From the IMG/VR virus record IMGVR_UViG_3300046694_000296, positions 1-64,000 of that record: a DNA stretch of 64,000 bases; one strand, written 5' to 3'. The notes under the pieces are model-generated. The model had not been told where the DNA came from, did no database searches, and saw nothing but the letters and a program-made list of their open reading frames with translations. Numbering within the stretch: position 1 is the stretch's first letter; each line of letters begins with the position of its first letter. Below are positions 1-54,155 of this stretch, in pieces. Made by a program: the position numbers and the translations under genes.

Positions 1-1
1 C

Positions 2-760
2 ACCCTGCCGGACGCAGAGTTCTACGACGTGAACGACGAGCTGGATGAATCGGCTGGCACGTTCACCGAGGTCGTGGCGAAGCTGCGCATCCTCGCTGGT
101 GACGTGGACGTCGACAAGTTCCTGCAGGAAACCGAGTCCGACACGAACGATCAGCGCGCAACGCAGATCGGTCTGAAGGCGAAGGCGGTTGCCCGCAAGT
201 TCAAGCGCACGATCGCCCAAGGCGACGCGACGGCCAACGCGAAGGAGTTCGACGGTCTGCCGAAGATGGTGTCGGCCGCTCAGACGCTCGACGCAGGCGG
301 TGCTGCAAACGGCGCGGCGCTCACGCTATCGATGCTCGATGAGCTCGGCGATGCGGTCATCAACGGCGCGGACGCATACGTGATGCGCCCGGGCACGATC
401 CGCGCATACCGCTCGTTGCTGTATGCAACCGGCGGCATCCAGCCGGCGATGGTCGAAGTGCCGAACTTCGGTCAGGCGATCCTCGGCCACAACGGTATCC
501 CGATTCTGCGTAACGACTTCCTGTCGAACGCGGAAACGAAGGGCACCAACACGAACACCTGTTCGGTGTATGCAGTGCGCCTGAACGAACTGGATGGCTT
601 TCACGGCCTCTGGGGCGGCAAGCAAGCGGGTATCCGCGTCGAGGACATCGGCACGGTGCAGAACAAGGACGCAGACCGCATCCGCGTGAAGTGGTATTGC
701 GGTTCGGCGCTGAAGAGCACCCGCTCGCTGGCGCGTCTGCGCGGCGTGACGAACGTCTAA
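2..760 (+). CDS. Major capsid protein (HK97-fold), 5'-truncated by window edge
   Basis: Frame open from base 2; EFDGL motif and C-terminal 'RIRVKWYCGSALKSTRSLARLRGV' typical of phage capsids; followed by a terminator and neck genes. Confidence 0.85.
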   Translation, partial: TLPDAEFYDVNDELDESAGTFTEVVAKLRILAGDVDVDKFLQETESDTNDQRATQIGLKAKAVARKFKRTIAQGDATANAKEFDGLPKMVSAAQTLDAGGAANGAALTLSMLDELGDAVINGADAYVMRPGTIRAYRSLLYATGGIQPAMVEVPNFGQAILGHNGIPILRNDFLSNAETKGTNTNTCSVYAVRLNELDGFHGLWGGKQAGIRVEDIGTVQNKDADRIRVKWYCGSALKSTRSLARLRGVTNV

Positions 761-32737: not shown

Positions 32738-34168
32738 ATGACTTCGATGACATCCTGCCAGGCATTCAAGGCGATCGAGAAAATCGCCGCGACGTCCCGC
32801 AAGAAAGACAAGGAGGCGATGGTCAAGCAGTTCCTCGCCTTCGACACGTTCAAGCGCGCGATCATCGCCGCGCTCGACCCGCTCGTGACCTACGGCATGC
32901 AGCAGGTGCCGGATCGCATCGACGGCGCAGCACCGGGCGCCAACACGTTCGAGAACGCGCCGATCTGGGAGACGCTCGACAAGCTGGCAAAGCGCACGCT
33001 CACCGGCAACGAAGCGCGCGACGAGGTGCAGCGCCTGATGACCTTCCTCACGCCCGAGTCGGCCGAGCTCTTCAAGCGCATCATCCGCAAGGACTTGCGT
33101 GCGGGCTTTTCCGAATCGACCGTCAATAAGGCATGGAAGGGCCTCATCCGCGAGTTCCCCTACATGCGCTGCGCGCTGCTCAAGGATGCGAAGCTCGACA
33201 CCTGGACGTGGGCCGAGGGCGTCATCTCGCAGGAGAAGGCCGACGGCATGTTCATGAATATCGACCACGAGGAGGGCGGTGTGGTCCGCATGACTAGCCG
33301 GCAGGGCACGCCATTCGATGTCGATGCGTTCGGCGAGTTTGCGGATCGCGTGCGTGCGCTGCTCACGCCGGGCACGCAGACGCATGGCGAGATGGTCGTG
33401 TTCGTCAATGGCAAGCTCGCTGCGCGTGAAATCGGCAACGGCATTCTGAACCGCGTAGCCGCGGGCGGCGCGTTCGGCCCGGACGAATCCCCGCTGTTCT
33501 ACGCATGGGATCAAATCCCGCTGGCTGCGGTCGCGCCGAAGGGCAAATACGAAGTCGGTTATCGCGATCGGCTGGTCGCGATGGCGGCGGGCCTGAAGAA
33601 AGGTGTGCCCACGCTCCAGCTCGGTCAGGCGATGATGATTCAGGTGATCCCGACGAAGCTGGTCAAATCGCTGGAAGAGGCGATGGTTCACTACCGCGAG
33701 CTGCTGGCGAAGGGCAAGGAAGGCACCATCATCAAGAACGGGGCCGCGATCTGGCGCGACGGCACGAGCAAGGAGCAGATCAAGCTCAAGCTCGAAGTGG
33801 ACGTCGATCTGGTCATCACGGGCATCGCACCGGGACGCGTGGGGACGAAAAACGAAGGCCGCGCCGGCGCGTTCAACTGCTCGAGCTCGGACGGCCAGCT
33901 GCGCGTCGATGTGACGGTCAAGAACGAGGATCTCCGGACCGCGGTTGACGCGAACGGCGATGACTTCATCGGTCGCATCATCGCAGTGCGGGCGAACGCG
34001 GTGATGAAGCCGAGCGAGAGCAGCGAGTTTCATTCGCTCTTCCTGCCGCGCATGGTCGAGGCGAGCTACCGGACGGACAAGAGCGAAGCCGACAGCCTCG
34101 AGTCGATCCTCGCACAGTTCGACGCCGCGGTCGGCGCGTCGCCGGCGAAGGTTGCGGAGGCCGCCTGA
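32738..34168 (+). CDS. ATP-dependent DNA ligase
   Basis: Motif I EKADG, 'HGEM', 'FYAWD', 'EGTIIK', 'KLK', 'LFLPR'. Confidence 0.93.
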   Translation: MTSMTSCQAFKAIEKIAATSRKKDKEAMVKQFLAFDTFKRAIIAALDPLVTYGMQQVPDRIDGAAPGANTFENAPIWETLDKLAKRTLTGNEARDEVQRLMTFLTPESAELFKRIIRKDLRAGFSESTVNKAWKGLIREFPYMRCALLKDAKLDTWTWAEGVISQEKADGMFMNIDHEEGGVVRMTSRQGTPFDVDAFGEFADRVRALLTPGTQTHGEMVVFVNGKLAAREIGNGILNRVAAGGAFGPDESPLFYAWDQIPLAAVAPKGKYEVGYRDRLVAMAAGLKKGVPTLQLGQAMMIQVIPTKLVKSLEEAMVHYRELLAKGKEGTIIKNGAAIWRDGTSKEQIKLKLEVDVDLVITGIAPGRVGTKNEGRAGAFNCSSSDGQLRVDVTVKNEDLRTAVDANGDDFIGRIIAVRANAVMKPSESSEFHSLFLPRMVEASYRTDKSEADSLESILAQFDAAVGASPAKVAEAA

Positions 34169-34169
34169 G

Positions 34170-34385
34170 ATGGAACAGCTGACTCTCCCTGCGATCCTCG
34201 CAGCGTCGCCGGCGCCCTGGACCTCGCAGGTGAACTTCGACGGCATCGGCGGCTGCCGCATGATTGATGCGAAGGGTGCCGAAGTGCCGCTGCTGTCTAT
34301 AATCGCGTTCGCGGGCATTCTCACCGCGACCATCGCCATGCAGAAGGCTTCACAACAGCCCGCGCAGGCACAACAGCCCGCATAA
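34170..34385 (+). CDS. Small hypothetical protein
   Basis: GGAGG RBS; follows ligase. Confidence 0.55.
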   Translation: MEQLTLPAILAASPAPWTSQVNFDGIGGCRMIDAKGAEVPLLSIIAFAGILTATIAMQKASQQPAQAQQPA

Positions 34386-34404
34386 CACAGCGCGTTGCAC
34401 CACA

Positions 34405-34431
34405 GAAAGCCCGGCCAAGAGCCGGGCTTTC
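34405..34431 (+). terminator. Hairpin terminator (possibly bidirectional)
   Basis: GAAAGCCCGGC-CAAGA-GCCGGGCTTTC. Confidence 0.65.
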
Positions 34432-34490
34432 GCCGTTGCGGAACGTCGAAGCGGGGCCGTATCATGTGCGCAATTCAGGAGAAAGGGCAC

Positions 34491-34889
34491 ATGACCTACA
34501 AGACCTTCACGCTCGGCGACCTACGCACGCTGCTCGCGCCGCTACCGACCACCCGCAAGCAAGCAGTTCTCTACACGCTCGACACGCGCGGCACGCTCGA
34601 CTACACGACCGTCCTCGGCTGGAAGGAGGCGCTGCGCACGCCCGCGAGCGAGTTCGCGAAGGACATCATTCGCGCACAGCCGCGCCACCTGCGCCTGGAC
34701 TACGTGTTCTGGGAGTATCACGAGACGGGCCAGGCCGCGCCGCTTTTCGGGCTCGAGGATAGCCTGCGGGAAGTGACGATGGGACGGAGCTTTGGCGAGC
34801 TGCAGGAGCTCTACGACCGAATGATCTGGATCGACAGCAGGGTGGAAGCGGAGCACTTCGTGCACACGCTGCTCAAGGAGCTGAATTAG
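34491..34889 (+). CDS. Hypothetical phage protein
   Basis: Purine-rich RBS; coherent codon usage. Confidence 0.6.
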   Translation: MTYKTFTLGDLRTLLAPLPTTRKQAVLYTLDTRGTLDYTTVLGWKEALRTPASEFAKDIIRAQPRHLRLDYVFWEYHETGQAAPLFGLEDSLREVTMGRSFGELQELYDRMIWIDSRVEAEHFVHTLLKELN

Positions 34890-35158
34890 AGATTGCGCCG
34901 GCGTGCGTGCAGGACGTTCAAGATGTCGATCCGCTTTAGCATGATGCGGTAGACGACGATGTAGTTCGGCAGAACGACCATCTCTCGCGTGTTCGGCCTG
35001 CGGCCCTCGCGATAGACATAGGGGTGATCGGGAAGTGTGGCGGCCGCAGCAAGGATCGTCTCTTGCACGAAATCTGCGGCGTCGATGCTGTCTTTGCTTA
35101 TGTGTTCGTGGATTTCGTCGAGTCGGCGTTCAGCACGCGGGGTCCAGTTAACCACCAC
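34886..35158 (-). CDS. RelE/ParE-family toxin
   Basis: 'WTPRAERRLDEI..I...A.......L...P..YREGR..TRE.V...NYIVVYR....I.ILNVLHARR'; GTG start overlapping the antitoxin end. Confidence 0.88.
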   Translation of the reverse strand: MVVNWTPRAERRLDEIHEHISKDSIDAADFVQETILAAAATLPDHPYVYREGRRPNTREMVVLPNYIVVYRIMLKRIDILNVLHARRRNL

Positions 35159-35345
35159 GCGCTTTTCTCCGCTCTGCGGCACGCGCGCGCAGGTTCGCGA
35201 CAACCTGATCGTGCGGGATCAACTCGCCGCGATCAGCTTCAGCCAGGCCCGCTTCGACCTCTTCACGGAACCACTTGTCGTAGGCTTCAGCCTCTTCCTT
35301 CGTGTCATGCCCGCTGACGGCGGGTTCGGTCCAGATATTTCCCAT
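35148..35345 (-). CDS. Cognate antitoxin
   Basis: 'AYDKWFREEVEAGLAEAD.G.LIPHDQV' antitoxin motif, upstream of and overlapping the toxin. Confidence 0.85.
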   Translation of the reverse strand: MGNIWTEPAVSGHDTKEEAEAYDKWFREEVEAGLAEADRGELIPHDQVVANLRARAAERRKARGG

Positions 35346-35566
35346 GAGTCACCTCATTCAGATGCCTTCATGATAGCGCGTGCAGCTTGGCACGTCACCG
35401 CGTCGTCTGCGGCGTGAACCCCTACCTGGTCGTGTTTGTTGATCATCGTTCTTCCTATGTCGTATTGATCAGGAGAAACGTGCTCGCGCTTGACGAAGCC
35501 ACGATAGAATAAAGCGCACCCACCGTCGCGGCCACGTGAGCCGTATGTTCAGCAAAGGCAGATGAC

Positions 35567-36115
35567 ATGAGCGTTGAGGAAGCAAAAAAGAGAGCGCTGG
35601 CAATCGTTCGGGAAAAGGGGCTGGACGTCGCCCTGATAACCGCGTTCCTTGAGACGCGGCATTACGCATCGTGGAGCAAACGGGACGATTTCGCCAAATA
35701 CAATATTGGCCTGTCGAACATATCTGGCGGACCGATGCCCGTGACGGTCGGATTCGCGAGCGGGAACGGCAACTCTGTGACAGCACAGCTGGACGGCATC
35801 GTGTTCACGCTGCGGGGCGTGTGGTATCTGCCTATGTCGTTTGATAGCAGTATCGCGACCGACATCTATGAAGGCGTCGAACTGTTGCTCGGTAACGATG
35901 TCGTGCTTGCTGGGGTGTATCAGGCGCGTGACCACGACGCGTGCATCCCGGCTCAATTTTCGCTGGTCAGCGTTGAGGGTTACCACTCAAGTCCGACGGC
36001 GGAACAGCTGCTCACGAAAATTTCAGATTTGATCAAGGCACACAAAGCGAAGCAAGCGGCCGAGCGCCAGGCCGCGGAAACGGAAAAGTATCGTGGCAAG
36101 TTCTCCTTTGACTAG
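35567..36115 (+). CDS. Accessory hypothetical protein
   Basis: 182-aa ORF with lower GC; no recognised motif. Confidence 0.6.
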   Translation: MSVEEAKKRALAIVREKGLDVALITAFLETRHYASWSKRDDFAKYNIGLSNISGGPMPVTVGFASGNGNSVTAQLDGIVFTLRGVWYLPMSFDSSIATDIYEGVELLLGNDVVLAGVYQARDHDACIPAQFSLVSVEGYHSSPTAEQLLTKISDLIKAHKAKQAAERQAAETEKYRGKFSFD

Positions 36116-36154
36116 GAGTTCCTCTGCGGTTTTCTTTTCACGCCTGCACAGGCT

Positions 36155-36182
36155 AGTTGACATAATACAAATTATCACCGTT
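36155..36182 (-). other. dif-like XerC/XerD recombination site
   Basis: Minus strand AACGGTGATAA-TTTGTA-TTATGTCAACT: 11-6-11 layout, ATAA/TTAT inner dyad, XerD arm 9/11 to TTATGTTAAAT. Confidence 0.75.
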
Positions 36183-36241
36183 TTGGGGCCAGATCATTTT
36201 TTGTCGTCCATGAGCTGGACAAGGCCGGGGAAGCATTAGCG

Positions 36242-36904
36242 TTATTTTTGCTTGTCCGGTTTCAGTTTTATGCCTTGCAGTATGCACATAGCCTCCCTAA
36301 GGTCGTCACCTTCTCGTTTCGGCCGCGCTGCTCGCGCTGCTCGCGCTTCTGGGGTGCACACATCCGCCGAGGTCAGCTTTGTCGCTGAGGCGGGAGCGGG
36401 TGCGCTTGCTGGTGCGATTGGGGGTGCGCTTGCAGTTGCGGGTGCGGTTGCAGTTGTGGGTGCGGGTGCGGGTGCGGGTGGAGAACCTACAGCCTTGGGT
36501 GGTGGACCGGGAGACGGCTCAGCCGGCAGCAACCTATCTAACATCGCCATATACAACTCGGCCTTCTTATCCTTGTCGATGTTGTCTCTCGACATCATCT
36601 GGCAAAAGAGATAGAGCAGTCGATACTTTACATTCGCCTGCTCCGATGTCGGCACGTCGGCGAGATTTTGCGTCACCTGACTCATGTTCCTCTCAACGTT
36701 CCCGCCGATGTCTACAATCTTGTATAACGTTTTTGCTCCGGCGCGAGCCTTTTCCTCGGACCTCTGTGTGAGTTGGATGCGCGGGTCGAGTGGAGAGCAA
36801 TCGTAGACGGGATCGTCGGCCAGCGCTTCGGTAGGACAAGCGACGGCGAAAACCGAAAACGCCGCAGCCGCGATGGAACGTTCCGTGTTCTTCAAATGAC
36901 GCAT
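36242..36904 (-). CDS. Exported accessory protein with Pro/Ala-rich linker
   Basis: Signal-peptide-like N-terminus (ALA|DD), paired Cys, PAPAPA linker. Confidence 0.6.
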   Translation of the reverse strand: MRHLKNTERSIAAAAFSVFAVACPTEALADDPVYDCSPLDPRIQLTQRSEEKARAGAKTLYKIVDIGGNVERNMSQVTQNLADVPTSEQANVKYRLLYLFCQMMSRDNIDKDKKAELYMAMLDRLLPAEPSPGPPPKAVGSPPAPAPAPTTATAPATASAPPIAPASAPAPASATKLTSADVCTPEARAARAARPKREGDDLREAMCILQGIKLKPDKQK

Positions 36905-36951
36905 GATGTTTGCCCCTGCTAACTGGCATTGCCTGTCGGCAAAAAAAGACT

Positions 36952-37248
36952 TTACGCCACCCGGCACCACCATGATTGAGCGTAGGCAGTTCCGTCCACA
37001 AACTCAATGCCAGTCAGCACAAACCCGAGCGGACCCATCCATGACAGCGCTGCGTCGTGCAGCGGCGGGAGCGGCTGCGGATCAGCTGCGCCGCCGGTCT
37101 GAAAGCGCGCGATGTTGGTGTAGCGGTTCAGCGCCGAGGACTTTTCCTGGCCGACCACCATGTCGCCCCGAACACCGGGCGCTCGCTGGACGTCGGCGTG
37201 ATCTTGCGCCTTGCCGCGCACGCGCATGGGTGTAGCTTGAATCAGCAT
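36952..37248 (-). CDS. Conserved small proteobacterial prophage protein
   Basis: 'LPPLHDA.L..M...GFVLTGIE.VDG.AYAQSWWCR' motif. Confidence 0.7.
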   Translation of the reverse strand: MLIQATPMRVRGKAQDHADVQRAPGVRGDMVVGQEKSSALNRYTNIARFQTGGAADPQPLPPLHDAALSWMGPLGFVLTGIEFVDGTAYAQSWWCRVA

Positions 37249-37968: not shown

Positions 37969-38712
37969 TCAAAGCGGCAGCGTGCCTTGGGGATTGCGCC
38001 GGAATTCGAACCGAATGTCCGTCACCTTGCGCCCCTCCTTAATCGGCGACCACGTAATGTCCCATCCGTCTTTCTCCTGCAACTCCTTCACGGCGACCTC
38101 GATGATCTGCTTGCGAGCGTCCTTGAAGTTCTGCAGATGGCTCGGCTTCGCGTCCATCGCGTGCAGGAAGTCCTTGATGGGCATCTGACGCCAGCCGGTG
38201 TCTTTGAACTGCATGAGGAGCTCGAGCAGCCGCCACGAGTAGATCGAGCGAAGCTCCGACGCCTGGCGCAAGAGATAGGTCGTGTGGTTGCCTCGCAGCA
38301 CCATCAGATACGGCGTCGCTTCCGGCGAGAAGCGCAGCTCCACCCACCCTGCCCTGTCCACGTAAGTCGCCCCGCTCACCCACCGATCCTTGTGGGCCGC
38401 GATCGCACCGCGCTGCACCGGCTCGGTCCAGGTGATCCATCGCTCCGCGAGCCCCTCGACGCCGGACTTCAGTTGCTCGTAGGCGGTCGTGGGATCGAGA
38501 TTGAATGTCTCGGCGTATTCCTTCGCTGTCAGTCGCACCTTGTAGCGGTTGTGACTGTCAAGGCGCACACTGTCGATCTTCGCGGCGCACGACTTGACGA
38601 TGCGCTGCTCGGCAAGCGTCTTGAGCCCATGCGAGGCGACCAGGAGGTCGTTGTGCATGGAGACGTGTCGATCAACGAGACTCAGCCCAGGAGTGGCGTG
38701 CTTGAGCTTCAT
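37969..38712 (-). CDS. Plasmid replication initiator (Rep_3/RepB family)
   Basis: 'NDLL.AS..L.L.EQR', 'W V....Y....G.V.L.FS....PYL', 'L.S.YS.RL.ELL.QF', 'GRKV....F.F'. Confidence 0.92.
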   Translation of the reverse strand: MKLKHATPGLSLVDRHVSMHNDLLVASHGLKTLAEQRIVKSCAAKIDSVRLDSHNRYKVRLTAKEYAETFNLDPTTAYEQLKSGVEGLAERWITWTEPVQRGAIAAHKDRWVSGATYVDRAGWVELRFSPEATPYLMVLRGNHTTYLLRQASELRSIYSWRLLELLMQFKDTGWRQMPIKDFLHAMDAKPSHLQNFKDARKQIIEVAVKELQEKDGWDITWSPIKEGRKVTDIRFEFRRNPQGTLPL

Positions 38713-39137
38713 TGGGAGGAATTCCGGTTTCGCGGGAGCGGCTTATTGGGAGTGATCGGATTTTGCACCCCCTTTTCTCCTTTGTCACTGGGAGGATTTC
38801 CGATTCAATGGGAGGAAAACCGGGTTACTGGGAGGATTTCCGGGTCCGGGAGCCTGTGCATAACCCTACTTCGACCGGCTTTTCTCCCAATGCGTGACCG
38901 GTCGCCCTCCTACTTTGACCGGTCGCCCACCCATTTAACCCGGAATCTCTCCCATTACCTGCCTGCAAACCCATGCTGGGTAAGGCTTTGAGCCGTATAC
39001 AAACGTTTAAGAACGTATACAAACCACGCGCGAGTAGGCTGTGAACAACTTCTCGCATCTCTTTGATTACCCGGGATTCCTCCCAATCCAAATATCCCGG
39101 GAATCCTCCCAATTCGCGTAACCCGGAAATTCTCCCA
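38713..39137. repeat. Iteron array / plasmid origin, consensus TGGGAGGAWTTCCGGG
   Basis: Plus copies at 38713, 38789, 38809, 38829; inverted copies at 38875, 38939, 39070, 39096, 39122; degenerate near 38747, 38898, 38919; DnaA-like boxes at 38855-38863 and 39040-39048. Confidence 0.88.
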
Positions 39138-39175
39138 ATAGGACAAGTCCTAAAAGGCAGTCTGCAAAGGGGTGG

Positions 39176-39547
39176 TCAGTCCATGCCCAGGCGCTTCTTC
39201 TCGCGCGCGACTTCCTTGGCTACCGCCTCGGCGATGAAGTCGTTCTTGGTCTTGCCGAGCGCGAAGCAGAGCAGGTTCAAATCCTCCTTCAGCGCTGGCG
39301 GGATGCGAACCGGCTGCTGCACCGGCGTCTCCTTCTTCGGCAGCGCCGCGCGGATGGCCTGCAGATCCACACCTTTACCCACGCGAACCGGCGCCCTCCT
39401 CTCTGCAACGACCACCGGCTCAGGTGCTTGGTCCTCTATCTCCCCCGCCTGAGCTGCGGGCGCCGGCTCATCAATGGCCGCCGTCTCTGCATTCAGGCTG
39501 TCGAGCCACGCTTTGCTTTTCGGTGCGCTCATCGGGTCTTTGCTCAT
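39176..39547 (-). CDS. Partition adaptor, ParG-like ribbon-helix-helix protein
   Basis: Disordered N-terminus plus 'QQPVRIPPALKEDL......GKTKNDFIAEAV' RHH; downstream of parA. Confidence 0.75.
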   Translation of the reverse strand: MSKDPMSAPKSKAWLDSLNAETAAIDEPAPAAQAGEIEDQAPEPVVVAERRAPVRVGKGVDLQAIRAALPKKETPVQQPVRIPPALKEDLNLLCFALGKTKNDFIAEAVAKEVAREKKRLGMD

Positions 39548-40200
39548 GAAAACACTCCAAGGTAAAGGTCTTTCATTTCGTTGGCAGCGGCACTATCCCA
39601 ATCCCGGCCCGAGAGCTCGGACACCGCCCTCCCCTGCGCATTGGCGAACTTGTAGGTTTCACGCGTCGCGACCAGCTTCGTCAGGACCGGCAGCTTGTCC
39701 TCGAACGGCTCCAACTGTTTGATCATCGACTTGGTGAAGCGCTTGCGCGGATCGGCCTGATTGAGCACCACGCGAATGTCGATCTGGCGTTTGTAGCTGC
39801 CGACCAGTGCGTGTAGATCGGGCACCGTGTCGAGGTCCATCTGCGACGGGATCAGCGGCGCGAGCACCTTCTCAGCGACGGCCAGGCCGTAGCGGAAGCC
39901 GTCCGAGTCCTTGCCGCCGACGTCGATGAAAACGTCCTGATACTGATCGGTGAGACGATCGAGCACCTCGGCGAATTCCTGCTTCGTGATCGGCTTGCGC
40001 GGTTCCCACCGCTCGACATGGACCTGCGGAAGAGCCGGGTCGTTAGCGCGGCGTGCCGCCCACTTCGCGGTGCTGTTTTGTCCGTCGAGGTCGAATACGG
40101 CAACCGTGCGCTTGAGCGATGCCCGGATCGCTGCCAAATTCTGGGTGAAGGTAGATTTGCCCACGCCTCCCTTCTCTGTTCCCACCATAATTACGGCCAT
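39544..40200 (-). CDS. parA: ParA partition ATPase (type Ib)
   Basis: Deviant Walker A KGGVGKST, 'DLDGQ', 'FIDVGG'; no N-terminal HTH. Confidence 0.92.
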   Translation of the reverse strand: MAVIMVGTEKGGVGKSTFTQNLAAIRASLKRTVAVFDLDGQNSTAKWAARRANDPALPQVHVERWEPRKPITKQEFAEVLDRLTDQYQDVFIDVGGKDSDGFRYGLAVAEKVLAPLIPSQMDLDTVPDLHALVGSYKRQIDIRVVLNQADPRKRFTKSMIKQLEPFEDKLPVLTKLVATRETYKFANAQGRAVSELSGRDWDSAAANEMKDLYLGVFS

Positions 40201-40310
40201 AGAAGCCTCGATTGAATGTGTGAATTGTGCGTAGAGTAAAGGCTTGCGCCCCACACTTCAAGTAGATTATGAGCATTTGGAACTACGTCGGAGCAATGCA
40301 AGCCACTATT

Positions 40311-41111: not shown

Positions 41112-41297
41112 TAGTAATTAGTGACATACAGATTGTGAGAACAAATTGGTAACCGCTAACTTTCCCTCATGTGTTTGATTATAGAACGCAAAATTGGTTG
41201 CCGAGAAAAAAACACTGCCGATGCTGATGGCGATGCTGTTTGCTGAAGTTGCATCGTGTTCGGTCGCGCACACTACAATATAAGTTAGACGTTACAT
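41112..41297. promoter_or_regulatory. Divergent control region with three copies of the palindromic box
   Basis: Boxes at 41112-41127, 41147-41162, 41282-41297; AT-rich; TACAAT at 41274-41279. Confidence 0.6.
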
Positions 41298-52845: not shown

Positions 52846-53100
52846 ATGGACGACATTGTGATTGAAAAGCACGTCCCGCCGCCGAAGGCAGGACACGGTT
52901 CATGGGGCAGCGTGCTCGCCCGCATGGAGGTCAACGACTCGTTTGTCGCTGACGACGAGAAGGCAGCGCGCGGGGCGATTCGCACCGCGGCCGCGCGCCT
53001 GAACATCGCCCTGACGATCCGCAAGGAAGTGGACGCAGACGGGAAACTTATCGAAGGAAAAATGCGCGTGTGGCGCATCGAAAAGGAGCAAGCAGAATGA
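52846..53100 (+). CDS. Small putative DNA-binding protein
   Basis: 'IEK.VP.P......W...L..MEV.DSF......RVWR' motif. Confidence 0.65.
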   Translation: MDDIVIEKHVPPPKAGHGSWGSVLARMEVNDSFVADDEKAARGAIRTAAARLNIALTIRKEVDADGKLIEGKMRVWRIEKEQAE

Positions 53101-54155
53101 GCATCGCAGACGATCTGGCAAAAGCAATCATGGGTGCAGTGGGTGAGTCCGACGCCGAGCTCGAGGTTCCCGGCTACATCGACACCGGCTACGAGCCGCT
53201 CAACGAGATCCTCTCGGGCGACCCGAAGAACGGCGGCATCGCGATGGGTCGCATCTTCGAAATCTTCGGCCCGTCATCGTCGGGCAAGACGTGGCTTGCC
53301 ACGCAGCTCATGAAGCAGGCGCAGGTGATGGGCGGCATCGCGCTGTTCATGGACCACGAACTGACCTTCCAGCAGCCGTTCGCTGAGAAGTCGGGCCTCA
53401 CGACGGAGTTCCCGTGGTTCATCTACAAGCGCCCCGATACGTGGGAAGCCTCGAACACGATGGCTCTGCAAGCGGCCGACGCGATTCGCAAGAGCAAGAA
53501 GCTCGATCCGCTGGCGCCCATCGTAGTCGTGTTCGATTCGGTCGCCGCGATGATCCCGCAGTCCGTGTTCGAGAAGGGCATCACGGACTACAACATGAAC
53601 GACACGACGGCGCTCGCTCGCGTGTCCTCGACGACGCTCAAGTCCATCAACCAGCAGTCGGCGAAGATGAATGTGACGATCGTCTACCTGAACCAGATCC
53701 GCACGAAGCCGGGCGTGGTCTACGGTGACCCGACGACGACCCCGGGCGGCTCGGCGTTCGAGTTCTATGCCACCGGCCGTCTCGCGTTGGGCAAGAAGTT
53801 CATCAAGGCGAAGGTCAACGGCAAGGACGAGATCGTCGGACAGCTGATGGGCATCGAGACGAAGAAGAACAAGCTGGCTCGCCCGCGTCAAGAGGTCGAT
53901 CTGCGCCTGCAGTTCCTCGACGATGGCATGACGACCGTGAACCTGACGCTCTCGCTGCTCGACCACGCGGTCGCCGTGGGCAAGCTGAAGAAGCTCTCCA
54001 CGGGCCGCATCGAGTGGATCAACGGGTCGAGCTACCCGCCGGGCCAGCTCGCGGACATGATCGACAAGGGCGGCCTGAAGACGGCGCTCCTGCACGTCAT
54101 CTACCCGAACCACTACCCGGCGCCCGCAGTCGCCCCGGTCGCGGCAGCAGCCTAA
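53097..54155 (+). CDS. recA: RecA/UvsX-like recombinase
   Basis: 'GRIFEIFGPSSSGKT', 'VFDSVAAM', 'NQIR.K.GV.YGDP.TTPGG', 'KNK'. Confidence 0.93.
   Translation: MSIADDLAKAIMGAVGESDAELEVPGYIDTGYEPLNEILSGDPKNGGIAMGRIFEIFGPSSSGKTWLATQLMKQAQVMGGIALFMDHELTFQQPFAEKSGLTTEFPWFIYKRPDTWEASNTMALQAADAIRKSKKLDPLAPIVVVFDSVAAMIPQSVFEKGITDYNMNDTTALARVSSTTLKSINQQSAKMNVTIVYLNQIRTKPGVVYGDPTTTPGGSAFEFYATGRLALGKKFIKAKVNGKDEIVGQLMGIETKKNKLARPRQEVDLRLQFLDDGMTTVNLTLSLLDHAVAVGKLKKLSTGRIEWINGSSYPPGQLADMIDKGGLKTALLHVIYPNHYPAPAVAPVAAAA

What the first reader, a model, noticed from the sequence alone, without database searches (positions are those of the whole stretch)
36155..36182. dif-like Xer site between convergent accessory genes
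Seen: a 28-bp site with 11-6-11 layout, a near-consensus XerD arm and a divergent XerC arm. Established: XerCD resolves dimers at dif, and some mobile elements integrate or exchange cassettes through dif-like sites. Inference: the element borrows host XerCD in place of a Cre/lox-type system, which matters because it encodes its own RecA. The flanking low-GC genes may have arrived through this site.
Basis: partly seen in the sequence, partly recalled or inferred. Interest (0 to 1): 0.6.

Follow-up and report, generated by a model that had tools for sequence, protein, structure and literature searches.

The report
Host-type Xer site on a phage-plasmid
A 28-base site in the plasmid-maintenance block of a soil phage closely matches the chromosome-unlinking (dif) sites of Burkholderia-family bacteria, so this phage, which has no recombinase of its own, most likely borrows the host XerC/XerD enzymes to keep its plasmid form single-copy; this is a known trick of plasmids seen here in a phage-plasmid.

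Summary
The site is real. It has an 11-6-11 layout at 36155-36182, read on the minus strand. Against the published Burkholderia mallei dif it matches 18 of 22 arm bases; the next best place in the record has 7 mismatches, and about 0.001 such matches are expected by chance. The "divergent" XerC arm is normal for Burkholderiaceae.

The site lies in a plasmid-maintenance block: PaaA2-ParE, Rep3 with iterons, and ParA. The record has no tyrosine or serine recombinase.

The 216-kb record is not one jumbo genome. It is two diverged genomes of about 108 kb in tandem, joined at the only shared 156-bp exact repeat, so it is probably an assembly figure-of-eight.

Copy B, a complete 107.5-kb relative and a Cupriavidus plasmid carry other initiator genes (Rep3, RepA_C or TrfA). 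Each has one dif-like site in the same slot, with similar arms and different central regions. Three relatives with an integrase have none.

Best reading: a XerCD dimer-resolution site of a phage-plasmid (confidence 0.7, no experiment). Cassette capture through the site is not supported. This is a new member of a known kind, of moderate interest.

The parts
36155..36182 (-). 28-bp dif-like Xer recombination site (xrs): XerC arm 36182-36172, 6-bp centre 36171-36166, XerD arm 36165-36155
   Evidence: Sequence. 4 of 22 arm mismatches to B. mallei dif; unique in the record; about 0.001 expected by chance. 24/28 to a Paraburkholderia diazotrophica site.
36183..36197 (-). 15 bases beyond the XerC arm, partly shared with the site of copy B; role unknown
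   Evidence: 38-bp local alignment of the sites of copies A and B. Contigs of run X4 match only 36157-36197.
35567..36115 (+). 182-aa orphan ORF that ends 40 bp before the XerD arm
   Evidence: No Pfam or PHROG family. Called as a gene in JGI contigs.
36242..36973 (-). 243-aa orphan ORF (hydrophobic N-terminal stretch, Pro/Ala-rich tail), convergent on the site
   Evidence: No Pfam or PHROG family. Same neighbours in all 12 contigs that encode it.
34886..35345 (-). PaaA2-type antitoxin and ParE-type toxin pair
   Evidence: Precomputed Pfam hits PF21217 and PF05016 on the called genes; phrog_2455.
37969..38712 (-). Rep3-family plasmid replication initiator
   Evidence: Rep3_N 5.8e-34 and Rep3_C 9.4e-15. 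44-49% identical to Burkholderia, Ralstonia and Paracoccus plasmid Rep proteins and to Burkholderia phage KS14 gp37.
38708..39142 (.). Iteron field: repeats of about 20 nt in both orientations, the presumed plasmid origin
   Evidence: Repeat families D2-D4, D10 and inverted pairs I1-I11.
39176..40254 (-). Partition pair: 123-aa small protein and a ParA/MipZ-type ATPase
   Evidence: CbiA, MipZ and ParA hits; gene calls.
53070..54155 (+). Phage-encoded RecA
   Evidence: PF00154, 146.9 bits, over the cut-off.

Best explanation
The site is a functional Xer recombination site (xrs) of a phage-plasmid of about 108 kb whose host is a member of the Burkholderiaceae, probably Paraburkholderia or a close genus. 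In the lysogen the phage replicates as a low-copy circular plasmid, using Rep3 with iterons, ParA-based partition and a ParE toxin-antitoxin pair. Homologous recombination, which the phage's own RecA may add to, makes plasmid dimers. Host XerC and XerD bind the two arms of the site on each copy, exchange strands across the identical 6-bp centre and return the dimer to monomers, so that partition works. Shown: the sequence match, its uniqueness, the context, the lack of any phage recombinase, and the pattern among relatives. Inferred: binding, catalysis, and how recombination is activated (FtsK or accessory proteins).
For: (1) Match to host-family dif: 18/22 arm bases to the published B. mallei dif, unique in the record, about 0.001 expected by chance. 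The exact XerD arm plus GKTGATAAT occurs in 16 of about 185,000 species genomes, and 13 of those are Burkholderiaceae. In that family the looser pattern occurs mostly 1-3 times per genome and once per replicon in complete genomes, and a reversed control is rare. (2) XerC and XerD each score over their equivalog cut-offs once in 5 of 5 such genomes. (3) No PF00589 or PF00239 gene in the whole record. (4) The site lies 1.8 kb from rep, within the maintenance block. (5) Relatives: copy B, which equals the stand-alone 105-kb contig G008, has a RepA_C initiator. G007 (107.5 kb, complete) has Rep3. A circular 107-kb plasmid of a cultured Cupriavidus metallidurans has TrfA. Each has exactly one dif-like site in the same slot between the ligase and CobT genes, and none has a recombinase. 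G006, G009 and G010 carry a tyrosine integrase and have no such site. (6) The XerD arm core is invariant across the four sites and the centres all differ, as expected for sites that must bind the same enzymes but recombine only with themselves. [quoted passage not shown]
Against: No experiment exists. The host is inferred, not shown. The site is next to the origin, not opposite it. E. coli-type KOPS do not converge on it, so a chromosome-like FtsK mode has no support. The unit size of about 108 kb falls in the range where enterobacterial plasmids more often carry their own resolvase. The XerC arms of copy B and of the Cupriavidus plasmid are weak (GTTAA, TCGAA). The nearest Rep3 phage kin, KS14 and FLC10, have no such site; KS14 carries an annotated serine recombinase.
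Confidence: 0.7

Rival explanations
1. The site is an attP. The phage uses host XerCD to integrate into a host dif with a matching centre, as IMEX elements such as CTXphi do, either instead of or besides dimer resolution.
For: Chromosome-type Burkholderiaceae dif sites with the same centre exist in metagenomes (L161, L162, L166, L170, L172, L173) and in genomes. The exact XerD arm variant of the phage is the one found where chromosomal dif-type sites abut P2-like prophages and other variable DNA. Those P2-like proviruses show no integrase.
Against: The phage carries a full replication, partition and toxin-antitoxin block. A syntenic relative is a free circular plasmid in a cultured isolate. 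No contig joins the phage to other DNA within the centre of the site. The integrated relatives (G009, G010) use an integrase and lack the site.
Confidence: 0.12
2. The site is one end of a pdif-type module, and the flanking low-GC genes were captured or swapped by Xer recombination at it.
For: Genes on both sides of the site differ between copy A, copy B and G007. Run X4 holds contigs that share only 36157-36197, with unlike DNA on both sides. A toxin-antitoxin pair sits beside the site in copy B and in two Paraburkholderia contigs.
Against: There is only one site per unit genome, and pdif modules need pairs. Homology breaks lie 0.7-1.9 kb from the site, or at its outer ends, and not in its centre. 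Other short pieces of the region are shared away from the site, as expected of ordinary mosaicism.
Confidence: 0.05
3. The site is not a working Xer site. It is a decayed relic, a binding site for another protein, or a promoter-like AT-rich element that resembles dif.
For: One sigma-70-like match overlaps it. The arms of copy B and of the Cupriavidus site are imperfect. No accessory or KOPS context was found.
Against: The promoter-like count is no higher than in shuffles, and any transcript would run antisense into convergent genes. There is no RNA structure. The match to host dif is about a thousand-fold beyond chance. The site is kept in four plasmid-type genomes and missing from three integrase-type ones.
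Confidence: 0.1

Closest known systems
Chromosomal dif of Burkholderia (B. mallei chr1 and chr2; Carnoy and Roten 2009, PMC2731167)
   Same: 28 bp with an 11-6-11 layout. GATAA at the inner XerC arm, a centre that starts with TT, and the XerD arm at 10/11. Intergenic and AT-rich.
   Different: It lies on a phage-plasmid beside the origin, not at a replication terminus. It lacks the tandem repeats of about 22 bp that flank the XerC side of most chromosomal sites in this family. There is no KOPS convergence.
28-bp xrs of large enterobacterial plasmids such as R27 (Fournes et al. 2025, PMC11724359)
   Same: A dif-length site with a 6-bp centre and no recognisable accessory sequence, on a large low-copy replicon that relies on host XerCD.
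   Different: The host family is different and the replicon is a tailed phage. At about 108 kb it is smaller than the replicons shown to be FtsK-dependent there (180 kb and above). The activation mode here is unknown.
cer/psi-type plasmid sites (ColE1, pSC101)
   Same: A plasmid borrows host XerCD for multimer resolution. The XerC arm and the centre are more variable than the XerD arm.
   Different: Those sites need about 180 bp of accessory sequence on the XerC side, plus PepA with ArgR or ArcA. Here only 59 non-coding bases lie on that side, and no such architecture could be tested.
P1 Cre/lox (phage-plasmid dimer resolution)
   Same: The same task in the same kind of element: keeping a plasmid prophage monomeric.
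   Different: P1 encodes its own recombinase. This phage encodes none and would depend on the host.
IMEX elements (CTXphi, VGJphi, TLCphi, gonococcal island)
   Same: A mobile element carries a dif-like site and uses host XerCD.
   Different: Those elements integrate at dif. This one has plasmid replication and partition genes, and no integrated form was seen.

Membership tests
XerCD recombination site (dif/xrs) | Two 11-bp arms in inverted orientation around a 6-8 bp centre | tested here: met
   11-6-11 layout with inner ATAA / TTAT symmetry.
XerCD recombination site (dif/xrs) | Arms match the dif consensus of the host lineage beyond chance | tested here: met
   XerD 10/11 and XerC 8/11 to B. 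mallei dif. Unique in the record; about 0.001 expected by chance. XerD 11/11 and XerC 9/11 to a P. diazotrophica site.
XerCD recombination site (dif/xrs) | The host encodes XerC and XerD | tested here: met
   TIGR02224 and TIGR02225 each over the cut-off once in 5 of 5 Burkholderiaceae genomes. The host itself is inferred from the site type, Rep3 kin and a 77.6% DNA match to a Paraburkholderia plasmid.
XerCD recombination site (dif/xrs) | XerC/XerD bind the site and recombine two copies of it | not testable with these tools
   Needs gel-shift and in vivo resolution assays.
XerCD recombination site (dif/xrs) | One site per replicon, kept in related replicons | tested here: met
   One site each in copy A, copy B, G007 and G008, and one candidate in the Cupriavidus plasmid locus (30 kb scanned). 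None in the integrase-bearing G006, G009 and G010.
Chromosome-like, FtsK-controlled dif | KOPS converge on the site, and the site lies opposite the origin | tested here: not met
   On unit A, GGGNAGGG counts are 5 forward and 1 reverse on one side and 9 forward and 2 reverse on the other. The site is 2.6 kb from the iterons. There is no GC-skew pattern. The KOPS motif of this host family is assumed to be the E. coli one.
cer/psi-type site with accessory sequences | About 180 bp of accessory DNA with ArgR or ArcA boxes on the XerC side | tested here: inconclusive
   Only 59 non-coding bases lie on that side, and 15 are partly shared with copy B. No model of such boxes exists for this host.
pdif-type module | Two or more sites in a replicon bounding a gene cassette | tested here: not met
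   A single site in unit A. The only other hit in the record is the positional homologue in copy B.
IMEX attP | The element is found integrated at host dif between two hybrid sites | tested here: inconclusive
   The four runs laid show no junction within the centre of the site, but only contigs were available. Host dif sites with the same centre exist.
Phage-plasmid | Phage genes together with plasmid replication and partition genes, and relatives kept as free plasmids | tested here: met
   Rep3, iterons and ParA. Phage-type replication genes: DnaE, DnaB, primase, SbcCD. A syntenic 107-kb circular plasmid in a C. metallidurans isolate.

The most novel reading that the evidence does not exclude
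The site serves two roles. It resolves plasmid dimers. Because its centre and arms equal those of some Burkholderiaceae chromosomal dif sites, it also lets this tailed phage-plasmid enter and leave a host replicon through XerCD without any integrase. The integrase-less P2-like prophages that abut dif-type sites in the same bacterial family would then point to Xer-dependent integration being used by tailed phages there.
Probability: 0.1. Interest if true: 0.7.

Novelty: new member of a known kind. Interest (0 to 1): 0.4.

Why it matters
Plasmid prophages must solve the dimer problem, and the textbook answer is a phage-encoded recombinase (P1 Cre/lox). Here a lineage of phages of about 105-108 kb appears to leave that task to the host. 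The lineage gives a natural comparison. The same slot in the genome holds either an integrase, or one of three unrelated plasmid initiators together with a dif-like site. This ties the site to the plasmid way of life and gives a sequence-only marker for telling plasmid-type from integrating members. It also predicts host range, because the site must fit the host's XerCD. For database users, it shows that a 216-kb "complete jumbo phage" record is most likely two genomes joined at a 156-bp shared repeat.

Tried and rejected
1. Megablast of the region against the phage and plasmid collections found nothing, and the intergenic stretch alone found nothing useful.
2. Single-protein locus searches with the two flanking orphans and with CobT returned only identical copies of the same phage. 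The exact-protein look-up likewise showed one context only.
3. The exact 22-mer of the site is absent from the species genomes.
5. I first took the weaker hit at 144392 for a partner site in one replicon. I rejected this once the self-comparison showed it is the homologous position in a second genome.
6. I first read the region around the site as wholly non-homologous between relatives. A more sensitive alignment showed other short shared pieces, so I withdrew the claim that the site is the only conserved island.
7. KS14 and FLC10, the nearest Rep3 phage kin, have no such site.
8. The Paraburkholderia fungorum plasmid hit is only a phage remnant broken by IS elements.
9. Tests for KOPS convergence, GC skew, a terminator, a promoter and RNA folding gave nothing.
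10. The tblastx search for a P2-like prophage beside the B. ubonensis site found only the fabI match.
11. I did not use the large protein searches, structure prediction or complex prediction, because the claim does not rest on them.

Full report
**The observation**

The 28 bases at 36155-36182 read, on the minus strand, AACGGTGATAA / TTTGTA / TTATGTCAACT. They sit in the 126-bp gap between two convergent ORFs, 35567-36115(+) and 36242-36973(-). This stretch has a lower GC content than the rest of the window.

Against E. coli dif the match is only 18/28, and it ties with one chance hit in the record. On that reference alone the site would not be convincing.

**What the window is**

The window is the first 64 kb of a 215,656-bp IMG/VR virus record with a 127-bp end overlap. 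The DNA occurs in many rhizosphere metagenomes.

The site lies inside a plasmid-maintenance block with these parts:
- a PaaA2/ParE toxin-antitoxin pair at 34886-35345;
- a Rep3 initiator at 37969-38712;
- a field of iterons at 38708-39142;
- a small protein plus a ParA ATPase at 39176-40254.

Around this block lie phage-type replication genes: DnaB, primase, ligase, CobT/CobS-like proteins, DnaE, RecA, SbcCD and RNR. Neither a tyrosine recombinase (PF00589) nor a serine recombinase (PF00239) is found anywhere in the record.

**Host-family dif**

Scanning one genome for each of about 185,000 species for GKTGATAAT-N5 plus the exact XerD arm gave 16 hits. Thirteen are in Burkholderiaceae: Paraburkholderia, Caballeronia, Trinickia and Burkholderia.

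In five of those genomes the loose pattern ATAA-N6-TTATGTNAANT occurs 2-5 times, and a reversed control never matches. In 61 genomes of the family it occurs mostly 1-3 times, and once per replicon in complete assemblies.

The published dif of B. mallei chr1 is AATGTCGATAA / TTGATA / TTATGTCAAAT (PMC2731167). The phage site matches its arms at 18 of 22 bases. No other place in the record has fewer than 7 arm mismatches, and about 0.001 such matches are expected from base composition.

So the "divergent XerC arm" is the family norm: GATAA, not GCATAA. All five genomes encode one XerC and one XerD above the equivalog cut-offs.

The host assignment also fits two other results. The Rep3 protein is nearest to Burkholderia-group plasmids and to Burkholderia phage KS14. 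Part of the window matches a Paraburkholderia fungorum plasmid at 77.6% DNA identity.

**The record is two genomes**

A self-comparison shows two collinear copies, A at 1-108,902 and B at 108,903-215,529, with 71-89% DNA identity. Three results point to an assembly artefact:
- The only stretch of 127 bases or more that is identical in both copies is 156 bp long. It lies at 1-156 and at 108,903-109,058, exactly where the contig starts and where the copies meet.
- Copy B exists alone as a 105-kb contig from another sample, 96% identical over 21 kb.
- The DNA across the A/B joint is contiguous in every relative of 105-107 kb.

The simplest reading is a figure-of-eight walk of the assembly graph through one shared repeat. 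A true cointegrate cannot be excluded without long reads. The unit genome is therefore about 108 kb.

**Comparative test**

The weaker hit at 144392 (ACGGGTGTTAA / TGCTTA / TTATGTCAATC; L216:3393-3420) is the positional homologue in copy B. Relatives found through the ligase gene give the following pattern:

| Genome | Rep or integrase in the slot | dif-like site |
|---|---|---|
| Copy A | Rep3 | one |
| Copy B / G008 | PaaA2-ParE, then RepA_C with its own iterons, then ParA | one |
| G007 (107.5 kb, complete) | Rep3 block 91% identical to A, other neighbours differ | ACGAGTGATAA / ATAATA / TTATGTAAAGT |
| C. metallidurans ZM02 plasmid (107,329 bp, circular, cultured isolate) | TrfA and a MipZ/ParA gene | candidate GCAGGGTCGAA / CATAGA / TTATGTCAAAT just before them |
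| G006 | P4-type integrase | none |
| G009, G010 (proviruses in isolate genomes) | integrase at the provirus edge | none |

None of the plasmid-type genomes has a tyrosine recombinase. No serine recombinase was found in the record that holds copies A and B or in the Cupriavidus plasmid; G007 and G008 were not searched for one. Across the four sites the core of the XerD arm is invariant, while the centres all differ.

This is what is expected if the arms must bind the same host enzymes while each replicon recombines only with its own sister copy.

**Mechanism**

The best reading is plasmid-dimer resolution by host XerCD. The work of Fournes et al. gives context. In enterobacteria, xrs of 28 bp without accessory sequences are almost restricted to large replicons, and the cloned ones recombine with XerCD under FtsK control (PMC11724359).

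Here the activation mode is open:
- E. coli-type KOPS show a plain strand bias and do not converge on the site.
- The site is next to the origin, and there is no GC-skew pattern.
- Only 59 non-coding bases lie on the XerC side.
- No promoter, terminator or RNA structure explains the site.

**Rivals**

- Cassette capture through the site is not supported. There is one site per unit. Homology breaks lie 0.7-1.9 kb away or at the outer ends of the site, not in its centre. Other short pieces of the region are shared elsewhere.
- An IMEX-like second role cannot be excluded. Chromosomal dif-type sites with the same centre exist, but no junction was seen in the four runs laid, which offered contigs only.

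**Literature**

Two full-text searches found no paper that describes Xer sites as the dimer-resolution system of phage-plasmids. A recent review lists multimer resolution only as a generic plasmid function (PMC11652158). This covers only the open library that was searched.

**Verdict**

The main inference is well supported by comparison but untested at the bench, and the cassette idea is not supported. This is a new member of a known kind.

Noticed in passing
Whole record; window 1-156 and genome 108,903-109,058: The 215,656-bp 'complete' virus record is two diverged genomes of about 108 kb (71-89% identity) in tandem. They are joined at their only shared exact repeat of 127 bases or more (156 bp), which is also where the contig starts. 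Probably an assembly figure-of-eight, not a jumbo phage.
   Followed up: yes
Window 34.9-41.5 kb; L216; L191, L192, L220: The slot between the ligase and CobT genes is a swappable lysogeny module. It holds Rep3, RepA_C or TrfA with ParA and a dif-like site in plasmid-type members, and a P4-type integrase (with an SRAP gene) in G006.
   Followed up: yes
L127-L156 (Burkholderiaceae genomes), about 60 bp on the XerC side of each dif-type site: Most chromosomal dif-type sites in this family are preceded by two tandem repeats of about 22 bp (core CGACATTTCTA...GC), ending in CTACA 5-8 bp before the XerC arm. The repeats are shared by the different sites of one genome and across genera. They are absent from the phage sites and from some plasmid-like contigs. 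Their function is unknown, and I know of no description.
   Followed up: partly
L034, L046, L049, L082, L122 (IMG/VR proviruses); G001:C5:207,367-208,372: P2-like prophages of Burkholderiaceae directly abut the XerD arm of dif-type sites, in L082 beside host fabI. Three proviruses that are 90-100% complete show no PF00589 integrase. B. ubonensis has fabI and the site at the same place without the P2 genes. This hints at Xer-dependent integration by a tailed phage. Only one site per provirus record was seen, so both ends are not yet in hand.
   Followed up: partly
L130:7261-7658 and L142:590-1328 (Paraburkholderia contigs); L216:2860-3420: A toxin-antitoxin pair (Phd/ParE or PaaA2/ParE) sits right against the XerD arm of the dif-like site in two Paraburkholderia contigs and in copy B. 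In copy A the 182-aa ORF lies between them.
   Followed up: partly
Window 36157-36197 in run X4; 34108-34137, 36058 and 36813-36830 in run X3: Other contigs in the same kind of sample match only the site plus 15 bases, with unlike DNA on both sides. Variants in X3 break at several points around the block, including a possible form that skips 34138-36812. The contigs themselves could not be fetched.
   Followed up: no
Window 41263-41290 and genome 148475-148502: A shared 20-base motif (GCGCACACTACAATATAAGT) lies upstream of the CobT-like gene in both copies. It may be a conserved promoter or operator.
   Followed up: no
L158, L168, L169, L171 (metagenome contigs, GC 0.63-0.67): Another dif-like site has the same centre and XerD arm as the phage but a different XerC arm (ATTACTGATAA). 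The DNA on its XerD side is conserved and the DNA on its XerC side varies. The organism is unknown.
   Followed up: no
Window 36384-36479: Imperfect 12-nt tandem repeats lie inside the 243-aa ORF and encode its Pro/Ala-rich tail.
   Followed up: no
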